This document shows positions 51,540-63,479 of a DNA stretch of 64,000 nt, piece by piece. Under the pieces are notes generated by a model. That model did not search any database, was not told the origin of the DNA, and saw nothing but the letters and a program-made list of their open reading frames with translations. Origin of the DNA: Obrimoposthia wandeli (Eukaryota); the NCBI GenBank assembly GCA_977020255.1, contig CDROCS010000122.1, forward strand, positions 248,001 to 312,000, given 5' to 3'. Positions within the stretch are counted from its first letter, which is position 1. Each line of letters opens with the position of its first letter. Made by a program: the position numbers and the translations under genes.

Positions 51540-51939
51540 CCGCCTTGATCAGGCGTAAGCCAGCAATTGCCCGACTTCGTTCGGGCGTTTCAAAAGCCAC
51601 GGCAAACGCCGTGTACCAAACAATTAATGCCTTAGATTATAAACCAAGCAGGCTTTACAGCTAATAGATAAGCAAGAGATCAGCACTATTGCTCCATTTT
51701 CAGGCAACGTGATCGTTCGTGAATCAGTTGATCATTTATGAAAAGGATTGTGATCAGCGATCTGGTGCTAAAAGAACATTTATGAATACACATCCCGAAA
51801 GCATAAGTTACATGTTCTGTATATGGACTTCACACAGAATAAAGCACTACTCAGTGGTCATTTAAGTGAAAGATCTAGATGTAAGTATATATAAGATCAA
51901 CTCTCATCTCTCGTTAATTGTCACTCTATTCATCCGCGT

Positions 51940-52503
51940 TTTTACGCTCAATAACAAATAAGGATTAAGTGTCGCGCCTTATATCAATGTAACCAGTGTC
52001 ACCATCAAGCTTCATTGATATCAGGCACTCTTTTTACCCATTCTAAACTGCCTTTAACTTTCTGCTTTATAGCCATTTATCTAATAACACAAGAAAAGAA
52101 TGGCAGCTCGGTGTCTCATACAACACGGCTCGGCGAGTGAAAAAAAGCTCATTTATGCCCTAAATCACTGGTTATATCTGATGGCCTTGCTTGTTTTCGT
52201 GGTGTTGAGGATGCAGAAAGTTTTCACCATTTAATAGTAACCGGCGGGGGTGCTGATTGTGTAGAGTTGCCGTATTTTAAATGGGTTAAAACAATGATCG
52301 GTAACGTAAAAAACGCAATACATGGAACATATCATTCAATCAACAAAAAGCACCTGCCGCGCTATCTGGCAGAGTTCTGTTTTAAGTTTAATAGGTGTTT
52401 TAATTTAGAGAAGATGCTTGAACAGTTAATATTTTCAAGTATTCAAACGGCACCGATGCCTCAACGTCTCCTCAAGTTAGCTGAGGCTCGATGGTAATCA
52501 AGT
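51940..52503 (+). mobile_element. IS1595-family transposase relic with internal deletion
   Basis: LYQCNQCHHQASLISGTLFTHSKLPL (Zn ribbon) and SDGLACF..WVKTMIGNVK..GTYH..KHLPRYLAEF..FNR..AEARW; catalytic core missing; GTAATCAAG end. Confidence 0.85.
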
Positions 52504-52851: not shown

Positions 52852-53109
52852 ATGATCAATAAAATAGCTACCATAATCTCGCAAATTAAAAACAATTCTT
52901 CACTCGCCGAATCTATTACTTTAGATTGCCATCTTATCGAAGATGTCGGTTTAGATTCTCTTGATATCATTGATTTCTTATTAGAACTTGAAGCAACTTT
53001 TGAATTACAGTTTGATTTTGATGAACTTGATTTTTCTATCATGCAAAGCATGCGTTTATTGATTGAATTTATCCAAGAACAACAAGCACGCAGTATAGAA
53101 ACATGTTAA
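52852..53109 (+). CDS. Acyl carrier protein
   Basis: 85 aa, acidic, DVGLDSLDIIDF phosphopantetheine-Ser motif, LEATFEL. Confidence 0.9.
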   Translation: MINKIATIISQIKNNSSLAESITLDCHLIEDVGLDSLDIIDFLLELEATFELQFDFDELDFSIMQSMRLLIEFIQEQQARSIETC

Positions 53110-54374
53110 CTAGCACAGCATGGGCTTGCTTTAATGCCGAGCCTCTCTGGAATGACTCCCGTCTTGCATCTCTTCCCGCATTTGCTAACGAAGTTCAGGA
53201 TAGGCAAGTTCACTTTTTTGATGAAGTACAAGTACCGCATCATTCACAAGAAAGTGTTCTCTGTTTAATCGCTCCTGACCCAGCTTTAACGCGTTACCAT
53301 GAAAGCCTTGATCTCGACATTAAACGCCAGGCATTCTTTGCGGAATTTTCTGCTTGGCAGCAAGCAGGCGAACCTACTTGGCGTGACAGCGACAGCCTTC
53401 AGAATAGACTCTTGAATGCTATTAAAAACGGCCAGCAGGCACCTTTTGCTTGTGTCCCTAGCGCTTATGAAAATTCTTTTGATGCCTCTCACCTACCTAG
53501 CTACAACAACGTAGTCAAGGTCAATGATAAACGCTACGCAGTTGACTCATGTCAGCTGCTCAATATCAAAAATTATGGTACGAACCTCTCTTCCATAAAT
53601 TGCATCAACTCACTGAAAAAATTACAATTACCGATAATTTTAAAAGAGCCTTTTGGTGTTTCAGGTAAAGGTAGCCTCGTCATAAAACACACAACCGTTT
53701 TGAGCCGGATTTGCCAGCACTTTGAAAAACAAAGCTTAAAAGGTAAACAAATTGGCCTAGTGGTTGAACCTTTCCTTGATAAAGAATTGGACTTTTCAAG
53801 TCAGTGGGAAATAAAACAAGACGGGAATGTTTCATTACTGAATATCTCAGAGATCATCAATGATAAACTCAAGTTTTCAGGGGTTAAACCTGCGTCAAAA
53901 CGCCTTCTTGGATTATTAAACAATCATTCCTATATCGAACAAATGACAACCTTACTTGAAACCGTTTACAAAGATGGTTACTGGGGGCCGGTGTGCATTG
54001 ATTCGATGTCACTCAAAGATGGGTCTTTAGTTCCAGTTGTAGAGATCAATGCTAGAGAATCTATGGGGGCTATTGCTCAACGTTGGTTCGCTATATTCGG
54101 CACTCCAGAGTCCATTTTGTTTCATCAGTATTCCGTAAAGTACTCTCAACCTATTGATATTTCTGTTTTACTTGAACAATTAGAACAACGGGGTTGTTTA
54201 TACACTAAAAATCGATCTGCAGGTTATGTATTACTTAATAGCCGCTGCCTACAGATCCCTTCAGAACAACCTCAAATAGGCCGCCTGTACCTATTGCACA
54301 TTGGTAATAATGAAGTAGAAAGTAAAAAACGCCTTGAGCTTGTTTTATCGCAACAAGGATCATGCATTCTATGA
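53103..54374 (+). CDS. ATP-grasp ligase (Pgm1/BtrJ-like)
   Basis: ILKEPFGVSGKG, VVEPFL, DFSSQW, GYWGPVCIDSM, VVEINAR. Confidence 0.8.
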   Translation: MLTSTAWACFNAEPLWNDSRLASLPAFANEVQDRQVHFFDEVQVPHHSQESVLCLIAPDPALTRYHESLDLDIKRQAFFAEFSAWQQAGEPTWRDSDSLQNRLLNAIKNGQQAPFACVPSAYENSFDASHLPSYNNVVKVNDKRYAVDSCQLLNIKNYGTNLSSINCINSLKKLQLPIILKEPFGVSGKGSLVIKHTTVLSRICQHFEKQSLKGKQIGLVVEPFLDKELDFSSQWEIKQDGNVSLLNISEIINDKLKFSGVKPASKRLLGLLNNHSYIEQMTTLLETVYKDGYWGPVCIDSMSLKDGSLVPVVEINARESMGAIAQRWFAIFGTPESILFHQYSVKYSQPIDISVLLEQLEQRGCLYTKNRSAGYVLLNSRCLQIPSEQPQIGRLYLLHIGNNEVESKKRLELVLSQQGSCIL

Positions 54375-55441
54375 GTGCTTCAGTTGCGATCTTAACTTCC
54401 AGCAGTGGACTAGGCAGCTTTGTTCCGGCGGTCACTTTATCCAAATTATTGCAAAAACAAGGTTTCAAGGTGACCTTTCATGCTATTGAGCAATTGTATT
54501 CAGCCCAAGCTCTTGAGCGATTTTTAAGAACTCAAGCTCAATGTCAAAAAAACCTTCGTATCGCTATGCTTACCCAAAAATGGTTAGAACAAACCCCTCA
54601 ATCCATTAATGACGCTATTGATACAATCAAATTGGCAGCATTAGTCAGACAGTGGCAAAACAATAATACAAAAAAATTCATTCTCTTTAGTGGCTTTTGG
54701 ACTTCTTTATTAAATGAGGCCTCCTTACTCCCTGATACTGAGATAGAAGCGATGCACCTTGATGTCGGCCTGTCGTTATCTTGGAAAAATAGCCCCAAAT
54801 TAAAGATTAAACATAATTGGTTATTATCCTCATCCTCTTTGCAGCACTTAGTACCGCCTACACCTAACATCGTTTGGCAGCAGCGTTTACCTAGAGTTGC
54901 TTTGCATGGCGGGGGATGGGATATCGGTAATATTGACCAATATATCCCTCAGTTACGGCAGCATTTCACCTTATTGATTAACGACTCTTCTCTGCCTGAC
55001 CCTGCTCATACTGACCATCGATTAATCTCTGATCCAAGTTGGTTGCCGTGGCAGCAAGGTTGTACAAACAATGGGCAATTTCCACCTCAATATTTACGTG
55101 TTAATAACCACACCATTGAAGGAAAAAATGCAGCCGAATCTTTCTTCCAACAACAACTTTCCAACTGTTTGGCATTAGTAACAAAACCTGGAGGCGCGAG
55201 TTTAATCGACAGCTTCGCAACCTCGACACCACTGGTTCTTCTGCCGCCATTTGGTGACTACGAAAAAGAAAATGGGACAAGTTGGATAGAACAGGGATTT
55301 GCTCTCTCTTTTGAAGATTGGCAAGCACAAGGGTTTTCTCTGGATGCATTAGAGAAGTGTCATCATAAACTCTTACACGCTAGCACACACCGACAAGTTT
55401 ATGGAGAATGTTATGCAAACCAATACCTCACTAAAGCTTGA
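54371..55441 (+). CDS. GT-B fold glycosyltransferase-like protein
   Basis: ATGA overlap with the upstream stop; SSGLGSFVPA N-terminal loop, HGGGW, LVTKPGGASLIDS..PLVL..GDYEKEN donor-binding-like region. Confidence 0.65.
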   Translation: MSASVAILTSSSGLGSFVPAVTLSKLLQKQGFKVTFHAIEQLYSAQALERFLRTQAQCQKNLRIAMLTQKWLEQTPQSINDAIDTIKLAALVRQWQNNNTKKFILFSGFWTSLLNEASLLPDTEIEAMHLDVGLSLSWKNSPKLKIKHNWLLSSSSLQHLVPPTPNIVWQQRLPRVALHGGGWDIGNIDQYIPQLRQHFTLLINDSSLPDPAHTDHRLISDPSWLPWQQGCTNNGQFPPQYLRVNNHTIEGKNAAESFFQQQLSNCLALVTKPGGASLIDSFATSTPLVLLPPFGDYEKENGTSWIEQGFALSFEDWQAQGFSLDALEKCHHKLLHASTHRQVYGECYANQYLTKA

Positions 55442-56636
55442 TGAAAATGGTTTTTCACGCCTAAAAGAACGAGCAAAACAGATAGCGTCAACACGCCGTG
55501 GACTTCAACAACGCCCTGATTGGGCTGCAGATTTACCACAGCAAGTCGGTATAAAAATGAACAATCATTGTAACCTTCGTTGTAAGCATTGTTTTGAGTG
55601 GAATGAAGAGGGCTATCACCACCAGCTTGGTAATAGTGAACGTGGTAATGAAATTCCGCTTGCTATGGTAGAGAAATTACTCAAAGCCACAGAGTCAACC
55701 CAAGCCCCTTTCTATTTATGGGGCGGTGAACCTTTAATGTATAAAAACATGCAAGGTTTAATGGATCTGTTCGAGCAATATCCAAGATGGATAACCATTT
55801 GTACCAACGGCCTACTTATTGAAAAGCATTTAGAGCAGTTAATGAGGGTAGATCAACAGCTTGCCTTATTAGTGAGCCTCGACGGCCTAGAAGAAGATAA
55901 TGATGCTATTCGTGGAAAAGGCGTATTTAAGCGCGTTGAGGCCTCGATTAAGAAGATCCTAGCACTCAGGAAAGCGAACCAATTTTCTGGGAAAATCTCT
56001 CTTTGCTTAACCATCAACGATAGTACTGTTGGTAAGCTTTACGACTTTGTTCAGTATTTTTCGGATCTCGGTATTGATAGTGTTTACATGGTATTCCCTT
56101 GGTATATACCAAAAAATGTCGCTATGCAAATGAATGACTGGGTAAAGAAAGAGCTGCCATGGAAACAAGCTAAGCTTGATGCCTCGAATGTGAACACAAT
56201 AACAACTCACGCAGCTACACCAAGAAAAAAACCTGATAACGAATACAGCTGGCACGGTTATACCTACCACTTATCACCTGAAAACATTCCCGCTTTACTC
56301 GACGACATTGCAAGAATTGGTAAAGAAACTTGGAGATGCCGGGTACGCTTTCATCCAAACCTAGAACCTCATGAAGTGGAAGGTTTCGTTAAAGGCAGCA
56401 CCAAGCCTGCTGAAAATAAAACCTTTTGCACGGCCATCCGTAATCGTTTAGATGTTCTGCCAAATGGAGATGTCTCAAGTTGTAAGTTTTTCCCCGAGCT
56501 TGAAGTCGGCAATCTACAGCTTATTCCCCTTAAAGATATTTGGCATGGACGCGCCTACCAAGCGTTTCGTAAACAGCTCAATTGTGGACTGATGCCAGTA
56601 TGCTCTAAATGCACTCTGCTCTACAGTACAGGTTAA
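55413..56636 (+). CDS. Radical SAM enzyme 1 with twitch/SPASM-type C-terminus
   Basis: CNLRCKHC, WGGEP, TNG, SLDG; C-x17-C..CSKC; GGAG RBS before ATG 55413. Confidence 0.92.
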   Translation: MQTNTSLKLDENGFSRLKERAKQIASTRRGLQQRPDWAADLPQQVGIKMNNHCNLRCKHCFEWNEEGYHHQLGNSERGNEIPLAMVEKLLKATESTQAPFYLWGGEPLMYKNMQGLMDLFEQYPRWITICTNGLLIEKHLEQLMRVDQQLALLVSLDGLEEDNDAIRGKGVFKRVEASIKKILALRKANQFSGKISLCLTINDSTVGKLYDFVQYFSDLGIDSVYMVFPWYIPKNVAMQMNDWVKKELPWKQAKLDASNVNTITTHAATPRKKPDNEYSWHGYTYHLSPENIPALLDDIARIGKETWRCRVRFHPNLEPHEVEGFVKGSTKPAENKTFCTAIRNRLDVLPNGDVSSCKFFPELEVGNLQLIPLKDIWHGRAYQAFRKQLNCGLMPVCSKCTLLYSTG

Positions 56637-56648
56637 ATAGGAAATCTC

Positions 56649-57737
56649 ATGTCAATCACTAATATTCTACAAAACAAACTCCCTATCTGGGTCACCCTGC
56701 AACTCACTGATGCCTGTAATCTTCGCTGTAAAATGTGTTACGAGTGGGGTGAAAATGGCTCTTACCATGGCCGGAAACTGTCTCGCCTTGATAAAGACGT
56801 CGCTTTTCGTGTGATCGATGAGTGTTTACCCGTTAAACCCTATTTTGCCTTATTCGGTGGCGAACCCATGATGTATCCATGGTTTGAAGACATTGTTGGC
56901 CGTATTCGTCATGGTGGCTCACGAGTTGATGTCCCAACCAACGGCACATTTTTAAAGCGCAAAGCCGAATCACTGGTAGAAACCCCACCAAACCGACTTT
57001 GGGTATCATTAGATGGGCCAGAAGAAATCAATGATGCTCAGCGTGGAGAAAACGTCTATAAAAAAGTTCAAGAAGGGGTGGAAACACTATTTGAACTCAG
57101 AGAAACCAAAGGGTTAAAAGAACCAAAAATTGGTTACACTTTCATTGTAACACCGCATACCCACCTCTACATTCAAGGGTTCTTTGAGAAATGTTTAAAC
57201 CTCGACATGGTGGATCACATCAGTATCGAGTTCCAAACTTTTGCAACCGAACAAGAGCATGAGAAACATCTCCGATTATTTAAACGATTATTTGGCGTTC
57301 AAGAGACCCCTTGTGCTGCAGGGATGATCGATGATGTGCGTAAGTTTGAAATGATGGATTATTCTGCAATTGAGTCCCAAATAAGCTGGGTTCAAAAAGA
57401 GTGTATAAAACGAGATATCTACTTCGTTTGCTACCCTAAAACTATTGCTCACGACAACTACAAAGCGTATTTCAACAAACAATACCAAAATCTCATCGAC
57501 AAACGAGATAACTGTTTTTTCCCTTGGATTTATATGGAAGTAGCCTCCAATGGTGACGTCACACCATGCCATACCTTCTACGATGTACCACTAGGTAATG
57601 TGAATAACAGCAGCGTACCAGAGATCTGGAACGGCAGTGTTATGAAAAACTTCCGTCGCCAGCTTCGTAATGAAGGTGGGTTATTCCCTATCTGCGGTTC
57701 ATGCGCCCGTTACTACGCTGATCCAAACAAACGATAA
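56649..57737 (+). CDS. Radical SAM enzyme 2 with twitch/SPASM-type C-terminus
   Basis: CNLRCKMC, FGGEP, TNG, SLDG; C-x17-C..CGSC. Confidence 0.92.
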   Translation: MSITNILQNKLPIWVTLQLTDACNLRCKMCYEWGENGSYHGRKLSRLDKDVAFRVIDECLPVKPYFALFGGEPMMYPWFEDIVGRIRHGGSRVDVPTNGTFLKRKAESLVETPPNRLWVSLDGPEEINDAQRGENVYKKVQEGVETLFELRETKGLKEPKIGYTFIVTPHTHLYIQGFFEKCLNLDMVDHISIEFQTFATEQEHEKHLRLFKRLFGVQETPCAAGMIDDVRKFEMMDYSAIESQISWVQKECIKRDIYFVCYPKTIAHDNYKAYFNKQYQNLIDKRDNCFFPWIYMEVASNGDVTPCHTFYDVPLGNVNNSSVPEIWNGSVMKNFRRQLRNEGGLFPICGSCARYYADPNKR

Positions 57738-57763
57738 TAGAGCTGTGATAAAGGATAGATAAG

Positions 57764-58768
57764 ATGAGCTATATTTCCGTTAAAAACCTTAGCAAGGAAT
57801 TTCCTTACTACCGCAAACAGTCTGGCCTTAAAGCTTCACTGAAAAACTTATGGTCTCGTGAACTGCATTCTAAACAAGTGGTCAACTCTGTATCTTTTGA
57901 TGTTGAACAAGGCGAAATCGTCGCTTTTATTGGCCCCAATGGCGCAGGTAAAACCACCACTATGAAGATGCTTTCGGGCATTCTTCACCCCTCGTCGGGA
58001 GAAGCAACCGTCATGGGGTATACACCTTGGGAGAGGAAAAAAGCATTTAAAATGCGATTTTCGATTGTTATGGGACAGAAGCAGCAGTTGTGGCCTGACC
58101 TACCTGCAATTGATAGCTTTGAACTCAATAAACGTATTTATGAAATTGATGACAATAGCTTTAAACAGGTACTCGGTGAGCTCAGCGAGATCCTTAATGT
58201 ACGTCACTTGCTCGACATTCAAGTTCGCCGCTTATCCCTTGGTGAACGGATGAAAATGGAATTGATCGCGGCTATGCTGCATCAGCCCGATGTGATTTTT
58301 TTAGATGAACCCACTTTAGGGCTCGATTTCCTCTCACAGAGAGCGATTTTGGCCTTCCTGAAAACACTGTCGCAAGAGAAAAAAACCACTATGTTACTCA
58401 CCAGCCATAACATGGTGGATATTTCAACCTTATGTAATCGTGCTTTAGTGATAGAGAGCGGTGGCCTAGTGTACAACGGGGAATTAAGTGATCTAAATAG
58501 CGTTGTGGGCGCCAAGCGTCATCTTCATATTCATACTCATACGCCTGTCATTCCGGCTGATTTTTCTTCTTTTGGTCACATTGTGCAATTCAGTAGCAAT
58601 GAAATTGTTTTAGAGGTGACTAAACAGGAGTCCAATGCCGTCTTATCTCGCATATTGAATCAGGTGGATGTGGCTGATATCAATATAAAAGAAGCACCAT
58701 TAGAAGAAAGTTTAGAACGTCTCTATAGCAATTTGAAGGATCATAACAGCTTGAAGGTGCTTGCATGA
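57764..58768 (+). CDS. ABC exporter ATP-binding subunit
   Basis: GPNGAGKTT, LSLGERM, IFLDEPT, LTSH. Confidence 0.93.
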   Translation: MSYISVKNLSKEFPYYRKQSGLKASLKNLWSRELHSKQVVNSVSFDVEQGEIVAFIGPNGAGKTTTMKMLSGILHPSSGEATVMGYTPWERKKAFKMRFSIVMGQKQQLWPDLPAIDSFELNKRIYEIDDNSFKQVLGELSEILNVRHLLDIQVRRLSLGERMKMELIAAMLHQPDVIFLDEPTLGLDFLSQRAILAFLKTLSQEKKTTMLLTSHNMVDISTLCNRALVIESGGLVYNGELSDLNSVVGAKRHLHIHTHTPVIPADFSSFGHIVQFSSNEIVLEVTKQESNAVLSRILNQVDVADINIKEAPLEESLERLYSNLKDHNSLKVLA

Positions 58769-59565
58769 GCAAGTACTTATTTATCATAAAAATGGGGTTA
58801 CAGATGTCCCTTACTTATCGGCTCAATTATGTCATAAGTTTGCTTTCTTCTGCCTTCCCAATTTTACTCCAAGTGATGCTGTGGCATGCCATATTCACTT
58901 ACACTGGGGCGGAAAAAGTGTATGGCTACTCATATTCAGAAATGATGGCCTACACCTTATTTGCTTCTCTCATTGGGCAGGCATTGCGGACTGGATTTGA
59001 ATATGAAGTCGCTAAAGATATTAAGGAAGGTGGATTAAACCGCTTTCTTATTCAACCTTTATCTTATCTAGGTTATCGCTTTTCCGCTTATGTGGGCACC
59101 AATATGAGTTATTTTATTGCCACATTAATTCTGCTTGGGTTATGCGGCCTTTTATTGGTCCATTTACTCGATATTTTCTTCACCTTAAAATCTTATTTAT
59201 TGCTGATCATCGTGCTTCTTGCCGCATTTATGATCCAGTTCTTTCTTTTTTATATGATCGGGTTAGTGGCTTTTTGGGCACAGGAAGTCTGGGGGGTATT
59301 TGAATCTGTCCGTATTGTTGGCCTTGTTCTCTCTGGTGGTATTTTTCCATTAACCGTATTTGGGGAGCTAGGAATGGAAATATTAAGTTATTTGCCATTC
59401 CAGTACGTAATTTTCTTCCCTATTGAAGTGGTGTTAGGACGTGCAAGCGATTCCGACATTTTTACTGGCTTTTCCATTCAACTGTTTTGGATTGGGTTAC
59501 TTTGGTTCTTGTCACGTTTAGTTTGGCAGCGTGGTTGTAAAAGCTTTATTGCATTAGGAGGCTAA
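58765..59565 (+). CDS. ABC-2 type permease (DUF990-like) 1
   Basis: Six hydrophobic segments; EVAKDIKEGGL..FLIQP, LSGGIFPL, LPFQY..FP. Confidence 0.85.
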   Translation: MSKYLFIIKMGLQMSLTYRLNYVISLLSSAFPILLQVMLWHAIFTYTGAEKVYGYSYSEMMAYTLFASLIGQALRTGFEYEVAKDIKEGGLNRFLIQPLSYLGYRFSAYVGTNMSYFIATLILLGLCGLLLVHLLDIFFTLKSYLLLIIVLLAAFMIQFFLFYMIGLVAFWAQEVWGVFESVRIVGLVLSGGIFPLTVFGELGMEILSYLPFQYVIFFPIEVVLGRASDSDIFTGFSIQLFWIGLLWFLSRLVWQRGCKSFIALGG

Positions 59566-59567
59566 CC

Positions 59568-60383
59568 ATGATCAATGAAATGTGGTGTGAGCTGGTGAAA
59601 CATGCTCGTATTTACGGATTTTTACTTAAAATAAACGCCATGCGTCAATTAGAGTACCGGCTTAATATTGCGCTAAACATCATGGTGGAAATGGGGTATT
59701 TAGGGGTTAAATTGATTTACGCCTACATCATTCATGATACAGGGGTACACATTGCGGGGCTTTCTCCTGACAGCATCTACTTGTTCATTGGTACTTATAT
59801 GTTAATGACGGTTTTTTTCGTTAGCATGCTGCAATTCAATATCGTGGTGTTTGATCAACAGATCCGAGATGGCGATTTTGATTTGATCCTCACAAAACCT
59901 GTCTCTTCTCAATTTATGGCGACGCTGAAGCACGTAGATACATGGATTTCGATCCCAAACATTATCGTGGGGCTTGGCCTTATCGGCTACGGCTGGCACG
60001 CTTCCGAGGTTGCTTTTAGCATCACCAATATTGTGGGATTTACCAGCTTTATTGCTTTGGGTATTGTCACCATGTATGGCCTGTTTGTACTACCTCTTTT
60101 ATTGGCCTTCAAGTTTAAAAACATCTCCGCGCTACAGAGTTTTTATTGGGCTATGTGGGATTTTAATAATCTGCCCCATAAAATCCACATTAGACCCGTT
60201 CAGCTGATGGGAGCCGTAGTATTCCCCTTGTTTTTGATCACTAACTGGTCGCCTCTGTTTGTGCTCGACCAACTATCAACACCAGAACTTATTTGGGGCA
60301 TCGTAGCGCCTGTCATTCTATTTTCGTTAACTCGTATTCTATGGAAAGTAGCCCTAAAACATTATGAAAGTGCCACCAGCTAA
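59568..60383 (+). CDS. ABC-2 type permease (DUF990-like) 2
   Basis: LEYRLN, IRDGDFDLILTKPVSSQF, hydrophobic, ends LKHYESATS. Confidence 0.85.
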   Translation: MINEMWCELVKHARIYGFLLKINAMRQLEYRLNIALNIMVEMGYLGVKLIYAYIIHDTGVHIAGLSPDSIYLFIGTYMLMTVFFVSMLQFNIVVFDQQIRDGDFDLILTKPVSSQFMATLKHVDTWISIPNIIVGLGLIGYGWHASEVAFSITNIVGFTSFIALGIVTMYGLFVLPLLLAFKFKNISALQSFYWAMWDFNNLPHKIHIRPVQLMGAVVFPLFLITNWSPLFVLDQLSTPELIWGIVAPVILFSLTRILWKVALKHYESATS

Positions 60384-60397
60384 AAAGGAGTATCACC

Positions 60398-61159
60398 TTG
60401 TTCGATTTATCAGAAAGAACCATTTTTATTACAGGTAGCTGCCGAGGCATTGGTTTGGCCATGGCAAAAGCCTTGCACAGCCAAGGAGCCAATGTTGCCA
60501 TTACTGCGCGCAATACTGAAAGCTACCCAAATATTTTACAGCACTTTCCAAGCGCACCAGACAACGTATTAGTTTTAGATTGTGACATTACTGATCCAGA
60601 TTCGATCGAAGCAGCAGTGCAGGCTACCGTCAACTGGAAAGGTGTGTTGCATGGTTGTATTGCCAATGCAGGTGAGCGTGGTGCTGGCATGAAAGTAACA
60701 GACATGCCTTATGATAGTTGGCAAGAAAGCTTGAATACCAACCTTAATGGTACGTTCCATACATTAAAAATCGTCGCAAAAAAAATGCAAACACAAGATC
60801 TGGGGGGGCGACTATTAGCGACTGCGAGCTTATCAAGTTTAAAAGGAACCGCAGGGTTTGCGGATTATGGTGCGAGCAAAGCGGCCATTAACTCCTTATG
60901 CCGCTCTTTAGCGGTAGAACTAGCGCCGAATAAGATCACTGTCAACTGTGTATTACCTGGCTGGGTCGAGACGGATATGAACAAAGATGTTGTCAATGAT
61001 AGAAGACAATACGAGTCTATCAAACGCCTTCGTATCCCTGCTGGACGCTGGGCGACTCCAGAAGACATTGCCCCTGTTGCTGTTTACTTAATGTCTGAAG
61101 AAAGCCGCTACCACACTGGCGATTCTCTAACCATTGATGGCGGATACGCAATCTTTTAA
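60398..61159 (+). CDS. Short-chain dehydrogenase/reductase
   Basis: TTG start with AAGGAG RBS; TGSCRGIG, NAG, YGASK, PGWVET. Confidence 0.93.
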   Translation: MFDLSERTIFITGSCRGIGLAMAKALHSQGANVAITARNTESYPNILQHFPSAPDNVLVLDCDITDPDSIEAAVQATVNWKGVLHGCIANAGERGAGMKVTDMPYDSWQESLNTNLNGTFHTLKIVAKKMQTQDLGGRLLATASLSSLKGTAGFADYGASKAAINSLCRSLAVELAPNKITVNCVLPGWVETDMNKDVVNDRRQYESIKRLRIPAGRWATPEDIAPVAVYLMSEESRYHTGDSLTIDGGYAIF

Positions 61160-61167
61160 GGTTATTT

Positions 61168-62292
61168 ATGAACACGATATATCCCGATTCACAGCCTACT
61201 CTTCTACAATCTAACCTTTTACAAACCAACCTCGACTTAATGAACCAATCCACATTTGAGTTTGATACAGCAAGGCTAGAATCGCCACCGAATTGCTTTG
61301 TATTTGGACTTTATACCTTGGGGGCGTTGAATGAAAATATCCCATCACTCGCCAGTGTGTTTTCTGAACATAGCTTCTCCTACTGGGATGATCACCACCA
61401 ACACCCTAACCTTATTGACCCAGATACTCTGTTCACTAAATTTGGCTTCTGTAGGCAGCAAAGCGAACCGTATTTAGATGTATATGCAGACCGAGTGGAA
61501 GGAAAAATGATAAACTTGCTCGCTGCTCGCTGTGGCATCGAAGCTGAAGTTATACCCTTTACAGACTTTAATAAATTGATGGCGTATTTTGGTCAGCAAA
61601 TGGCCCAGCAGCAACCCGTATTGTGCGACTTCGATATGGGTTACATTCCATCGCGACATCAGTATAAGATCATACGCGGTTATGAGCATGTAGTCTTTTT
61701 TACACAGTTTGATCAAAATACTCAGCAGCTTTTATTGTGCGATCAAGATGAACTAAAGGATCCCGTTCCACTCGCTGATGTAGAAGCATGCTTTGACTCT
61801 ATGCTGAAAATGAAAGGAACGTTCAATTGTTACCAAGCGAAAGCGACAATAAAGAAAAGTCAATTCCTCTCCCCAAGTGACATCCGAAACGATGTGAGAG
61901 CCAATGTAGATAATTTAACCACAACGAATCCAAAGCTAGGTATGCAAGCAATTAATCGCTATTTAGAGTCGATGAAACAAGTTAAGCCGCTCAATACCCC
62001 ATTTTATGTCTTTGGTCACTGGGTGTTTGCACTACAACGAAATATGCAAGTACGCTGGTGTGATTTAGCACTGCAATCACTGGATTCTCAGGCTCAAAAA
62101 ACCGCAGCCCAAGAATTAAAGCAGCACCTTTCCCTTGTGGCAAATAAATGGAATGAATTTACCATGCTTGATAAATTGAGCCGGAAGATCGATCGTGTTA
62201 CGCCAGCTCAGGTGGCGCAAAAATGTATTGATGCTGCAACATTGGAACTAGACAGTCCACGTTATTGGCTGGCATTACAAAAGGTGCTTTGA
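61168..62292 (+). CDS. BtrH-like protein (papain-like acyltransferase/hydrolase fold)
   Basis: N-terminal NCF; PVLCDFDMGYIP..Y....EHVVFF..FD....LLLCD resembles BtrH_N; helical C-terminus (GMQAI..QR..KW..E). Confidence 0.6.
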   Translation: MNTIYPDSQPTLLQSNLLQTNLDLMNQSTFEFDTARLESPPNCFVFGLYTLGALNENIPSLASVFSEHSFSYWDDHHQHPNLIDPDTLFTKFGFCRQQSEPYLDVYADRVEGKMINLLAARCGIEAEVIPFTDFNKLMAYFGQQMAQQQPVLCDFDMGYIPSRHQYKIIRGYEHVVFFTQFDQNTQQLLLCDQDELKDPVPLADVEACFDSMLKMKGTFNCYQAKATIKKSQFLSPSDIRNDVRANVDNLTTTNPKLGMQAINRYLESMKQVKPLNTPFYVFGHWVFALQRNMQVRWCDLALQSLDSQAQKTAAQELKQHLSLVANKWNEFTMLDKLSRKIDRVTPAQVAQKCIDAATLELDSPRYWLALQKVL

Positions 62293-62603: not shown

Positions 62604-63479
62604 CTAGGGTTTTGTGTGGGTAACCATTACCAATTCTTGATCGCTAACGAGTTCAAACTGAACATATAGCGCACTGTATTCTGCAAGTGATTGTATGTGA
62701 GAGCCACCGCATGGGATTTCAATCATTTCCTTCTCCCCTAAATCACATTGCCAGTAACGTGAATCGGTTAACTGCGTACCTTCACGGCGCATCACTACCT
62801 CAGCACCACTCTGACGCCAAGTTTCTAACTGCTGGTTAATGAGTTCAGTTAACGCCACTAAATTAGCCAGCATATCTGCCGTATTTAGCCCACGTTTGCG
62901 TAATGTTTTACCTAACCGATAAGTATCAGTACTTTTATCTTCACTCACAATGCTCTGCTGCTGAGCGTAACTGTGAAAATCGTAATGCCCTAATTCATCT
63001 TTACGTGAGGCATCTTTACGCCAATAATCGCTATGTAACACTTTATTAAGTGCTAAAGAAGAAAGATGTCCTGCACTATGCCCACGGCTTAATGCCTGCT
63101 GATTAGCCTTATCAACCGACAAGATGACGGTATCTCCCCTGCTCCATTGAACGTCTTCAGCAATATAATGCACAACAACAAATGCCCAACCAGACACATC
63201 ACGCTTAACGGGAATGTCTGTGCCGACATAAAGCGTATTCGTTGCTAAATTAACAGCACCTGTAAAACAACCTGCCACATCAAAACATATTTCTCCCACA
63301 GTCATAGTGCCTTTATCTGCAGGGTGATCAGGCCAAATATGACTAACAGGATGAAAACAGGTGCGATCTGTCACTACATATACACCACGTGAAATGGCTG
63401 GTTCACATAGCTGAATTTCAGCTTCTGTTTGCCATTGTGGCACCGTAAATAGCACGTGGGTTGGTGTAACATCAGACAT
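62604..63479 (-). CDS. AlaX-like tRNA-editing domain protein
   Basis: RTCFHP, HSAGH and PCGGSH Zn-binding motifs. Confidence 0.85.
   Translation of the reverse strand: MSDVTPTHVLFTVPQWQTEAEIQLCEPAISRGVYVVTDRTCFHPVSHIWPDHPADKGTMTVGEICFDVAGCFTGAVNLATNTLYVGTDIPVKRDVSGWAFVVVHYIAEDVQWSRGDTVILSVDKANQQALSRGHSAGHLSSLALNKVLHSDYWRKDASRKDELGHYDFHSYAQQQSIVSEDKSTDTYRLGKTLRKRGLNTADMLANLVALTELINQQLETWRQSGAEVVMRREGTQLTDSRYWQCDLGEKEMIEIPCGGSHIQSLAEYSALYVQFELVSDQELVMVTHTKP

What the first reader, a model, noticed from the sequence alone, without database searches (positions are those of the whole stretch)
52852..54374. ACP / ATP-grasp pair as an NRPS-free loading module
Seen: a standalone ACP (DSL) overlapping an ATP-grasp gene with a long divergent N-terminus. 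Known: BtrJ ligates glutamate to the BtrI ACP, and Pgm1-type enzymes form amides with unusual acids. BtrK, BtrO and BtrG equivalents are absent, so the tethered unit is unlikely to be AHBA. No PPTase is encoded, so host AcpS/Sfp is needed. Inference: a new ACP-loading or amide-ligase specificity.
Basis: partly seen in the sequence, partly recalled or inferred. Interest (0 to 1): 0.7.

Follow-up and report, generated by a model that had tools for sequence, protein, structure and literature searches.

The report
Carrier protein with ATP-grasp loader
A small carrier protein and the ATP-grasp enzyme encoded right behind it most likely form an NRPS-free loading step, of the kind known from butirosin and closthioamide biosynthesis, at the head of a widespread ten-gene operon whose product nobody has identified.

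Summary
52852-53109 encodes an 85-aa phosphopantetheine carrier. Its Ser36 is conserved in all 116 related carriers. Its last 7 bases overlap a 423-aa gene (53103-54374) that Pfam does not recognise but that is an ATP-grasp ligase:
- a family profile hits ATP-grasp structures (E 4e-12);
- the AlphaFold model (pLDDT 92) matches 8YND, PGM1, BesA and SAOUHSC_02373 over its full length (Z 26-28);
- all catalytic motifs are invariant.

The "long divergent N-terminus" is the ordinary pre-ATP-grasp domain.

The carrier gene abuts the ATP-grasp gene in 75 of 80 related loci from at least six phyla. Where an AMP-ligase is also present, it has its own second carrier. A relative named after BtrJ sits in a carrier/decarboxylase cassette and shares 31 conserved positions with this clade.

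The best reading is therefore a BtrJ/CtaD-type thiotemplated loader. Dunbar et al. (2020) already described this class and surveyed about 400 orphan clusters.

This clade differs in its partners. It lacks the decarboxylase in 75 of 80 loci. It is instead tied to a GT28-like glycosyltransferase (77 of 80) and to radical SAM/SPASM enzymes (71 of 80). The substrate and product are unknown, and no biochemistry exists.

I rate it a new member of a known kind, of moderate interest.

The parts
52852..53109 (+). Standalone 85-aa acyl/peptidyl carrier protein
   Evidence: PF00550 E 7.6e-6, above cut-off. Generic ACP models in NCBIfam. A carrier gene sits in the same position in 75/80 related loci.
52954..52962 (+). 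D35-S36-L37 phosphopantetheine attachment motif (Ser36 codon 52957-52959)
   Evidence: Read from the sequence. Among 116 related carrier ORFs, Ser is conserved in 100%, Asp35 in 90% and Gly33 in 82%.
53103..54374 (+). 423-aa ATP-grasp ligase of the PGM1/BesA/BtrJ-like subgroup, the predicted loader of the carrier
   Evidence: Profile against PDB: 8ynd E 3.9e-12, biotin-dependent carboxylases down to 4e-7. AF2 model pLDDT 92.1, pTM 0.91. Foldseek E 8e-18. VIA-align Z 26-28 over residues 1-423.
53103..53492 (+). Pre-ATP-grasp (N-terminal) domain, about residues 1-130, with conserved E13, W16, D40
   Evidence: Alpha/beta secondary structure in the model. Structural alignments start at model residues 1-3. 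The named residues are >=90% conserved in both clades.
53529..53531 (+). K143, the linker lysine of the ATP site
   Evidence: Invariant in alignment A1. Matches feature 1 of the superfamily definition quoted in PMC4431377.
53643..53672 (+). K181 and the glycine-rich loop G185-V-S-G-K-G190
   Evidence: Invariant or nearly so. Aligns with the K...GGGGKG segment of methylcrotonyl-CoA carboxylase alpha, PDB 3u9s.
54000..54056 (+). D300 and the E314-I-N316-A-R318 metal/phosphate-binding motif
   Evidence: Invariant in A1 and in both clades. Aligns with the EINAR segment of 8ynd.
54362..55441 (+). 359-aa divergent GT-B (GT28/MGDG-synthase-like) glycosyltransferase, overlapping the ATP-grasp stop by 13 nt
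   Evidence: No Pfam hit for the window copy. The family profile A2 matches processive diacylglycerol beta-glucosyltransferase 9wde at E 3.6e-8. Present next to the ATP-grasp gene in 77/80 loci.
55401..57737 (+). Two radical SAM/SPASM enzymes (55401-56636 and 56649-57737)
   Evidence: PF04055 and PF13186. The family is present in 71/80 loci.
57764..60383 (+). ABC-2 exporter: one ATPase and two PF06182 permeases
   Evidence: Pfam. ATPase in 62/80 loci and permeases in 54/80.
60398..61159 (+). Short-chain dehydrogenase/reductase (SDR)
   Evidence: PF13561 E 1e-59. Best NCBIfam hits are glucose 1-dehydrogenase and FabG-like models.
61168..62292 (+). BtrH_N-like papain-fold protein, the predicted transacylase or off-loading enzyme
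   Evidence: PF14399 E 3.5e-6, but 27.7 bits against a cut-off of 29.7. C43, H174 and D192/D194 are conserved in its five close orthologues.
52267..52497 (+). IS1595-family transposase remnant just upstream (context: an acquired island)
   Evidence: PF12762 E 1.7e-10, last 39 profile positions only. GC falls to 0.37 at 52-54 kb. The Veronia copy lies between an IS3-family transposase and a TnsA-like fragment.

Best explanation
The pair is a thiotemplated, NRPS-independent loading module of the BtrI/BtrJ and CtaE/CtaD type. A PPTase encoded elsewhere in the host genome converts Ser36 of the carrier to the holo form. The ATP-grasp enzyme binds ATP-Mg through K143, K181, the GVSGKG loop, D300 and E314/N316/R318, and phosphorylates the carboxylate of a small acid to an acyl-phosphate. 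The phosphopantetheine thiol of the co-translated carrier attacks it, giving acyl-S-carrier plus ADP and phosphate. As BtrJ and CtaD do, the enzyme may then add further units to an amine of the tethered group. The rest of the operon is expected to work on or from this thioester. That includes the GT28-like glycosyltransferase, the two radical SAM/SPASM enzymes and the SDR, followed by transfer or release by the BtrH-like papain-fold enzyme and export by the ABC-2 pump. Shown here: the fold, the catalytic residues, homology to a BtrJ-named clade, and conserved pairing with a carrier. Inferred: thioester formation, the order of the downstream steps, and the acid loaded. L-Glu or L-Asp through the side-chain carboxylate are the first candidates because both characterised relatives use them, but no decarboxylase follows in this clade.
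For: 1. ATP-grasp fold and intact active site.
2. Direct homology to the actinomycete pre-ATP-grasp clade. phmmer gives E 6e-14 to 2e-10. BLASTP against P0080 gives E 9e-20. UniRef names P0080 '[Butirosin acyl-carrier protein]--L-glutamate ligase', and its gene lies in a PCP-KASIII-ATP-grasp-Orn/DAP decarboxylase-PCP cassette. 31 positions are >=90% conserved in both clades, among them E13, W16, D40, G393 and R394, which are not among the four canonical catalytic features listed in PMC4431377. The Atlas neighbours include a cluster with the same BtrJ-derived name.
3. A carrier gene ends at the ATP-grasp start, on the same strand, in 75/80 loci from Vibrionaceae, Pseudoalteromonas, Paenibacillus, Clostridia, Bacteroidota, Nostoc and others. 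Typical overlaps are 4-14 nt.
4. One carrier per loader. Loci that also encode an AMP-binding ligase have a second carrier directly upstream of it in 16/20 cases, against two carriers in 14/60 loci without one (Fisher p 1e-5). This mirrors CtaE/CtaD and CtaH/CtaI.
5. The window operon holds one carrier and no other carboxylate-activating enzyme.
6. A BtrH_N-like protein, the off-loading partner in both characterised systems, closes the operon (PMC7183216).
7. Three other genomes that carry the cluster (Veronia, Photobacterium, P. luteoviolacea) each encode two PPTases on other contigs.
Against: There is no biochemical evidence for any member of this clade. The nearest solved structures (8YND, PGM1, BesA) are amide ligases that work without a carrier. 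The authentic BtrJ and CtaD sequences could not be obtained, so the link to them runs through a protein that only carries BtrJ's name by automatic annotation. The PLP decarboxylase that follows loading in both characterised pathways is absent here and in 75/80 related loci. Pfam PF18604 and PF18105 do not match the window protein. Gene adjacency shows a functional link to the carrier, not which reaction is catalysed.
Confidence: 0.6

Rival explanations
1. The ATP-grasp enzyme is an amide ligase, not the loader. It would join a free acid to an amine on a carrier-bound intermediate (like the second BtrJ reaction alone), or join two free substrates as PGM1 and BesA do. The carrier would be primed by a housekeeping enzyme encoded outside the operon, such as FabD, an acyl-ACP synthetase or a CoA-dependent PPTase transfer.
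For: The closest solved structures are carrier-independent amide ligases: 8YND, PGM1 and BesA, Z 27-28. The SDR's best NCBIfam hits include 3-oxoacyl-ACP reductase FabG models, which would suit a fatty-acyl-type thioester supplied by primary metabolism.
Against: The operon has no other activating enzyme, acyltransferase or ketosynthase. The carrier pairs one-to-one with the ATP-grasp gene, and AMP-ligases bring their own second carrier. The clade shares its non-nucleotide conserved residues with a clade found in BtrJ-type cassettes.
Confidence: 0.2
2. The mechanism of the pair is the same, but the role is different. The module would supply an activated aminoacyl group for decorating a cell-envelope glycolipid or glycopolymer, a Dlt-like system with an ATP-grasp enzyme in place of DltA, rather than for a diffusible secondary metabolite.
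For: The conserved glycosyltransferase resembles diacylglycerol glucosyltransferases and MGDG synthase, which act on lipids. ABC-2 exporters accompany the module in 62/80 loci. The carrier has weak DltC hits, E 0.003-0.016. Some Paenibacillus genomes carry two copies.
Against: Distribution within Vibrionaceae is patchy and linked to insertion sequences, which looks like an accessory island rather than envelope housekeeping. There is no MBOAT/DltB-like or DltD-like gene. Accessory genes vary between loci, including methyltransferases, KASIII and AMP-ligases, as expected of specialised metabolism.
Confidence: 0.12
3. The operon is a decaying, non-functional remnant of a transferred island, so the pair does nothing in this host.
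For: It lies beside an IS1595 remnant and a truncated LacI-like fragment. No RNA run holds the stretch.
Against: All ten reading frames are intact and tightly packed or overlapping. All catalytic residues are retained. The same ten genes, in the same order, are kept in Veronia at only about 50% protein identity, which indicates purifying selection.
Confidence: 0.05

Closest known systems
BtrI / BtrJ of butirosin biosynthesis (Niallia circulans)
   Same: A standalone carrier is encoded directly before an ATP-grasp ligase of about 420 aa. The ligase makes an acyl-phosphate and loads it on the phosphopantetheine thiol. A BtrH-type papain-fold transferase lies in the same cluster, and there is no cluster PPTase. 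The mechanism is as summarised in PMC7183216 and PMC11350588.
   Different: No BtrK decarboxylase, BtrO/V monooxygenase, BtrG cyclotransferase or 2-deoxystreptamine genes are present. The loaded acid is unknown.
CtaE / CtaD of closthioamide biosynthesis (Ruminiclostridium cellulolyticum), and the 'noncanonical thiotemplated' clusters surveyed by Dunbar et al. 2020
   Same: An ATP-grasp enzyme loads a PCP, releasing ADP and phosphate. A BtrH-like transacylase (CtaG) is the partner. A second PCP has its own AMP-ligase (CtaH/CtaI), which matches the two-carrier loci found here. The survey found that 95% of 402 CtaD homologues lie next to a PCP and that many lie with glycosyltransferases.
   Different: CtaD works in cycles with the decarboxylase CtaF, which is missing here. 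The survey's glycosyltransferase group was defined by PF13528, which none of 39 members of the glycosyltransferase family found here matches. It is therefore unclear whether this clade was in that survey. Its supplementary table is not held.
PGM1 (pheganomycin), BesA, 8YND Streptomyces peptide ligase and SAOUHSC_02373
   Same: These are the best structural matches over the whole chain, Z 26-28 against 20 or less for PurD, PurK and biotin carboxylase. They share the three-domain layout with a pre-ATP-grasp domain.
   Different: As far as is known, they ligate free substrates without a carrier. Sequence identity is 13-18%. Pfam PF18604 and PF18105, built on PGM1, do not hit the window protein.
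DltA / DltC and LysX / LysW (analogies only)
   Same: Each is a small dedicated carrier charged by a dedicated ATP-dependent ligase outside an NRPS. LysX is also an ATP-grasp enzyme.
   Different: DltA is an adenylating enzyme. LysW is not phosphopantetheinylated and carries its substrate on a C-terminal glutamate. The comparison rests on established knowledge and was not tested here.

Membership tests
ATP-grasp superfamily | Lysine in the linker between the pre-ATP-grasp and RAGNYA domains | tested here: met
   K143 is invariant in the 36-sequence alignment A1 and >=90% conserved in both clades. Feature list taken from PMC4431377.
ATP-grasp superfamily | Lysine at the end of RAGNYA strand 2, followed by a glycine-rich loop | tested here: met
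   K181 and G185-V-S-G-K-G190 are conserved. They align with the K...GGGGKG segment of 3u9s.
ATP-grasp superfamily | Aspartate in strand 4 and an ExN motif in strand 5 of the kinase-like domain | tested here: met
   D300 and E314-I-N316 (plus R318) are invariant. They align with the EINAR segment of 8ynd.
ATP-grasp superfamily | Three-domain ATP-grasp fold | tested here: met
   AF2 pLDDT 92.1. Foldseek probability 1.00. VIA-align Z 28.4, rmsd 3.3 A, 362 residues aligned to 8ynd.
BtrJ/CtaD-type carrier-dependent ATP-grasp ligases | Sequence homology to BtrJ or CtaD themselves | tested here: inconclusive
   The authentic sequences were not obtainable. The link is indirect: E 9e-20 to P0080, which is named after BtrJ by UniRef and sits in a PCP/decarboxylase cassette, plus an Atlas neighbour cluster with the same name.
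BtrJ/CtaD-type carrier-dependent ATP-grasp ligases | A dedicated phosphopantetheine carrier encoded alongside | tested here: met
   7-nt overlap in the window. 75/80 related loci have a carrier in this position, and its Ser is 100% conserved.
BtrJ/CtaD-type carrier-dependent ATP-grasp ligases | Partner PLP-dependent decarboxylase (BtrK/CtaF) | tested here: not met
   None in the operon or the window, and only 5/80 related loci have one. This is not strictly defining, since about 65% of PCP-linked CtaD homologues had one.
BtrJ/CtaD-type carrier-dependent ATP-grasp ligases | BtrH/CtaG-like papain-fold transacylase in the cluster | tested here: inconclusive
   PF14399 matches at E 3.5e-6 but scores 27.7 bits, below the 29.7 cut-off. 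C43, H174 and D192/D194 are conserved in five orthologues with CtaG-like spacing, but no fold or triad test was done.
BtrJ/CtaD-type carrier-dependent ATP-grasp ligases | ATP-dependent acylation of the holo-carrier thiol, with ADP and phosphate as products | not testable with these tools
   Needs enzymology.
PGM1/BesA-type free-substrate amide ligases | Match to Pfam PF18604 (PreAtp-grasp) or PF18105 (PGM1_C) | tested here: not met
   No hit even at E <= 10. More distant relatives do carry PF18604.
PGM1/BesA-type free-substrate amide ligases | Works without a carrier protein (no carrier in the genomic context) | tested here: not met
   A carrier gene is fused in context in 75/80 loci.

The most novel reading that the evidence does not exclude
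The pair heads a widespread, wholly uncharacterised, decarboxylase-independent thiotemplated pathway. The ATP-grasp family, both clades together, was found in at least 568 species genomes; the 80 loci nearest the window span at least six phyla. In this pathway a carrier-tethered acid would be glycosylated by a GT28-like enzyme and remodelled by SPASM radical SAM enzymes while still on, or just after leaving, the carrier. The result would be a new class of exported glyco-acyl or glyco-aminoacyl metabolite. The ATP-grasp enzyme would then have a substrate other than Glu or Asp.
Probability: 0.3. Interest if true: 0.65.

Novelty: new member of a known kind. Interest (0 to 1): 0.4.

Why it matters
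Carrier loading by ATP-grasp enzymes has been shown in only two pathways, butirosin and closthioamide, and standard genome-mining rules miss such clusters. This pair belongs to a large clade that Pfam does not recognise, and its constant partners differ from both known cases. In place of a decarboxylase there is a divergent glycosyltransferase plus radical SAM/SPASM enzymes. Working out what is loaded would give a handle on hundreds of orphan clusters in Paenibacillus, marine Gammaproteobacteria, Clostridia, Bacteroidota and cyanobacteria. It could also add a new building block to NRPS-free thiotemplated chemistry. As it stands, this is an expected extension of a published concept, not a surprise.

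Tried and rejected
- **Family scans.** Direct Pfam and NCBIfam scans of the 423-aa protein gave only faint ATP-grasp hits. A single-sequence PDB search was also weak (E 0.13). The profile and the structure model were needed.
- **Authentic BtrJ and CtaD.** I could not obtain these sequences. The supplementary table of PMC7183216 is not held. A literature search for 'BtrJ' returned mostly noise. No paper mentions entry 8YND. The single genome-contig scan kept only the 80 loci nearest the window.
- **Dunbar's glycosyltransferase group.** I tested whether the neighbouring glycosyltransferase is the PF13528 type of that survey. None of 39 family members matches PF13528.
- **Promoters and terminators.** The scans gave no more sites than shuffled sequence.
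- **PPTase in the window's own assembly.** This search is uninformative about the host, because G000 is a 1.35-Gb, 6,912-contig mixed assembly with 31 hits, none on the window's contig. I used three bacterial genomes that carry the cluster instead.
- **Expression.** No RNA run holds the stretch.
- **Rejected idea: LysW-type amino-group carrier.** The Asp-Ser-Leu motif and the PP-binding match rule it out.
- **Rejected idea: the small ORF is a RiPP precursor.** The Ser is invariant in a carrier-type helix II context.
- **Not run.** The large representative-protein search, because the word search and profiles had already settled the family.
Full report
**Observation**

The ATG of the second lies within the last codons of the first, a 7-nt overlap.

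The small protein matches PP-binding (PF00550, E 7.6e-6, above the curated cut-off) and generic ACP models. It carries D35-S36-L37.

The 423-aa protein has no Pfam hit. It has only faint matches to several unrelated ATP-grasp models (PurK, LdmS, RimK, CPSase, PurT) around residues 130-300, mostly 166-254.

**The fold is ATP-grasp**

- The word search found 63 homologues. I aligned 36 of them as A1.
- The A1 profile hits PDB 8ynd, "ATP-grasp peptide ligase", at E 3.9e-12. It hits the ATP-binding domains of methylcrotonyl-CoA, propionyl-CoA and pyruvate carboxylases and PurK at E 4e-7 to 1e-3.
- AlphaFold2 on A1 gives a confident model: mean pLDDT 92.1, pTM 0.91.
- Foldseek returns only ATP-grasp enzymes.
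- VIA-align separates a top group from the general ATP-grasp enzymes. The top group, aligned over model residues 1-423, is 8YND (Z 28.4), PGM1 3WVQ (27.5), BesA (27.1) and SAOUHSC_02373 (26.1). PurD, PurK, PurT and biotin carboxylase score Z 20 or less.

The four catalytic features of the superfamily are listed in PMC4431377, and all are invariant here:

1. The linker lysine, K143.
2. The strand-2 lysine with its glycine-rich loop, K181 and G185-G190.
3. The strand-4 aspartate, D300.
4. The ExN motif, E314-I-N316, with R318.

The "long divergent N-terminus" is the usual pre-ATP-grasp domain. It is conserved in the family (E13, W16, D40).

**Link to the carrier**

Five homologues looked up individually all have a PP-binding gene ending at the ATP-grasp start. 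They come from Veronia, Pseudoalteromonas, a Hungatella MAG, Paenibacillus and a JGI metagenome.

It returned the 80 closest loci, which come from Vibrionaceae, Pseudoalteromonas, Paenibacillus, Clostridia, Cyclobacteriaceae, Pedobacter, Nostoc, Myxococcaceae, Acidobacteriota and others.

In my scripts on those 80 loci:

- A carrier gene ends at or near the ATP-grasp start, on the same strand, in 75 of 80. Four of the other five have a carrier within 10 kb.
- The attachment serine is conserved in all 116 carrier ORFs.
- Twenty loci also encode an AMP-binding ligase. Sixteen of these have a second carrier, placed directly upstream of that ligase. Two carriers occur in only 14 of the 60 loci without an AMP-ligase (Fisher p 1e-5).

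Each activating enzyme thus brings its own carrier. This matches closthioamide, where CtaD loads CtaE and CtaI loads CtaH (PMC7183216). The window operon has one carrier and no other activating enzyme.

**Link to BtrJ and CtaD**

- The distant tail of the homologue list is an actinomycete clade carrying Pfam PF18604 (PreAtp-grasp). It is reached directly by phmmer at E 6e-14 to 2e-10.
- One member, P0080, is named "[Butirosin acyl-carrier protein]--L-glutamate ligase" in UniRef. Its gene lies in a PCP-KASIII-ATP-grasp-Orn/DAP decarboxylase-PCP cassette.
- BLASTP of the window protein against P0080 gives E 9e-20.
- Comparing 54 window-clade sequences with 88 of that clade, 31 positions are at least 90% conserved with the same residue in both. 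They include residues outside the nucleotide site: E13, W16, D40, G393 and R394.
- The protein atlas places clusters with PF18604, with the same BtrJ-derived name and with PGM1_C among the nearest neighbours.

I could not obtain the authentic BtrJ or CtaD sequences, so this link is indirect.

**How this clade differs**

A BtrK/CtaF-type decarboxylase is absent from the window and present in only 5 of the 80 loci. In the two of those loci that I scanned (L080, L052), a second, PGM1-type ATP-grasp gene is also present.

The constant partners are instead:

- a divergent GT-B glycosyltransferase in 77 of 80 loci. It has no Pfam hit in the window copy. Its family profile matches processive diacylglycerol beta-glucosyltransferase at E 3.6e-8;
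- radical SAM/SPASM enzymes in 71 of 80;
- an ABC-2 exporter, with the ATPase in 62 of 80 and the permeases in 54 of 80.

Variable extras are BtrH_N-like proteins, methyltransferases, NAD-epimerases, GFO/IDH/MocA oxidoreductases, GT2 enzymes, aldo-keto reductases and KASIII.

The window operon runs 52852-62292: carrier, ATP-grasp, GT-B, two rSAM/SPASM, ABC-2 exporter, SDR, BtrH-like. The genes overlap or sit at most 26 nt apart. Veronia pacifica keeps the same ten genes in the same order, at 49% identity for the ATP-grasp protein.

The operon sits in a low-GC stretch behind an IS1595 remnant. In Veronia it lies between an IS3-family transposase and a TnsA-like fragment. It is therefore a mobile accessory island.

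**PPTase**

No PF01648 match lies on the window's contig. The assembly as a whole is 1.35 Gb in 6,912 contigs and holds 31 PPTase matches, so it is a mixed or host-plus-microbe assembly and cannot answer the question. Three other genomes that carry the cluster each encode two PPTases, one with an AcpS-sized frame and one with an Sfp-sized frame, on other contigs.

**Interpretation**

The most likely mechanism (confidence about 0.6) is as follows. The ATP-grasp enzyme forms an acyl-phosphate from a small acid. The phosphopantetheine thiol of its co-translated carrier captures it, as shown for BtrJ and CtaD. The thioester is then tailored and is passed on by the BtrH-like enzyme.

The acid is unknown. 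Glu and Asp are the first candidates by analogy, but the lack of a decarboxylase means the downstream chemistry differs.

The rivals are:

- an amide-ligase-only role, with the carrier primed by another enzyme (0.2);
- the same mechanism serving envelope glycolipid decoration rather than a diffusible metabolite (0.12);
- a dead remnant (0.05).

**Novelty**

The concept is published. Dunbar et al. 2020 reconstituted CtaD/CtaE. They mined 660 CtaD homologues (402 network nodes), 95% of them next to a PCP. They noted large glycosyltransferase-linked and KASIII-linked groups of orphan clusters. Whether this exact clade was in that survey is unclear, because its glycosyltransferase does not match their PF13528 marker. 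I file the pair as a new member of a known kind, in an uncharacterised and widespread sub-clade.

**Limits**

- No expression data could be found.
- No multimer model could be made.

Noticed in passing
whole assembly G000; window = C122:248001-312000: The window's 'genome' is a 1.35-Gb assembly of 6,912 contigs with 31 separate PPTase matches. The window itself is plainly bacterial: guaBA, xseA, and a cluster whose nearest relatives are in Vibrionaceae. It is therefore a bacterial contig inside a very large host or mixed assembly. Near-identical DNA also occurs in food, invertebrate-gut and hydrothermal-vent metagenome runs.
   Followed up: partly
window 51545-52497: A truncated LacI-type HTH fragment (51545-51664) and an IS1595-family transposase C-terminal remnant (52267-52497) precede the operon. 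GC drops to 0.37 at 52-54 kb. The Veronia copy is flanked by an IS3-family transposase and a TnsA-like fragment, so the operon looks like a horizontally moved island.
   Followed up: partly
window 54362-55441: The 359-aa protein after the ATP-grasp gene has no Pfam hit, yet it is the most constant partner (77/80 loci). Its family has an invariant H182-G-G-G-W186 motif and a GT28-like C-terminal nucleotide-sugar motif. Its profile matches a processive diacylglycerol beta-glucosyltransferase (9wde, E 3.6e-8). The acceptor is unknown.
   Followed up: partly
window 62604-63479 (-): A 291-aa protein without a Pfam hit has weak NCBIfam matches to the editing region of alanyl-tRNA synthetase and to AlaXM (E 2e-6 to 7e-5). 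It lies just past the operon on the other strand. It is not conserved next to the Veronia copy.
   Followed up: no
L080:2899-15321 and L052:9636-18416 (Paenibacillus loci): The few related loci that do have a BtrK-like decarboxylase also carry a second ATP-grasp gene of the PGM1 type (PF18604 + PF18105). In L080 there are also extra carrier genes and an extra rSAM/SPASM gene. These are two thiotemplated ATP-grasp modules in one cluster.
   Followed up: partly
L036, L039, L042-L049, L053, L057, L059, L062, L071, L073, L076 (about 3.5-4.5 kb upstream of the ATP-grasp gene): A second carrier gene overlaps the start of an AMP-binding ligase gene in 16 of the 20 loci that have such a ligase. This is a two-carrier, two-loader layout like closthioamide's CtaE/CtaD plus CtaH/CtaI.
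   Followed up: yes
window 61168-62292: The BtrH_N match is below Pfam's cut-off and covers only profile positions 32-133. The candidate catalytic Cys43 lies upstream of the matched part. The protein is too diverged from the BtrH_N-like genes of the Paenibacillus loci to be linked to them by phmmer.
   Followed up: partly
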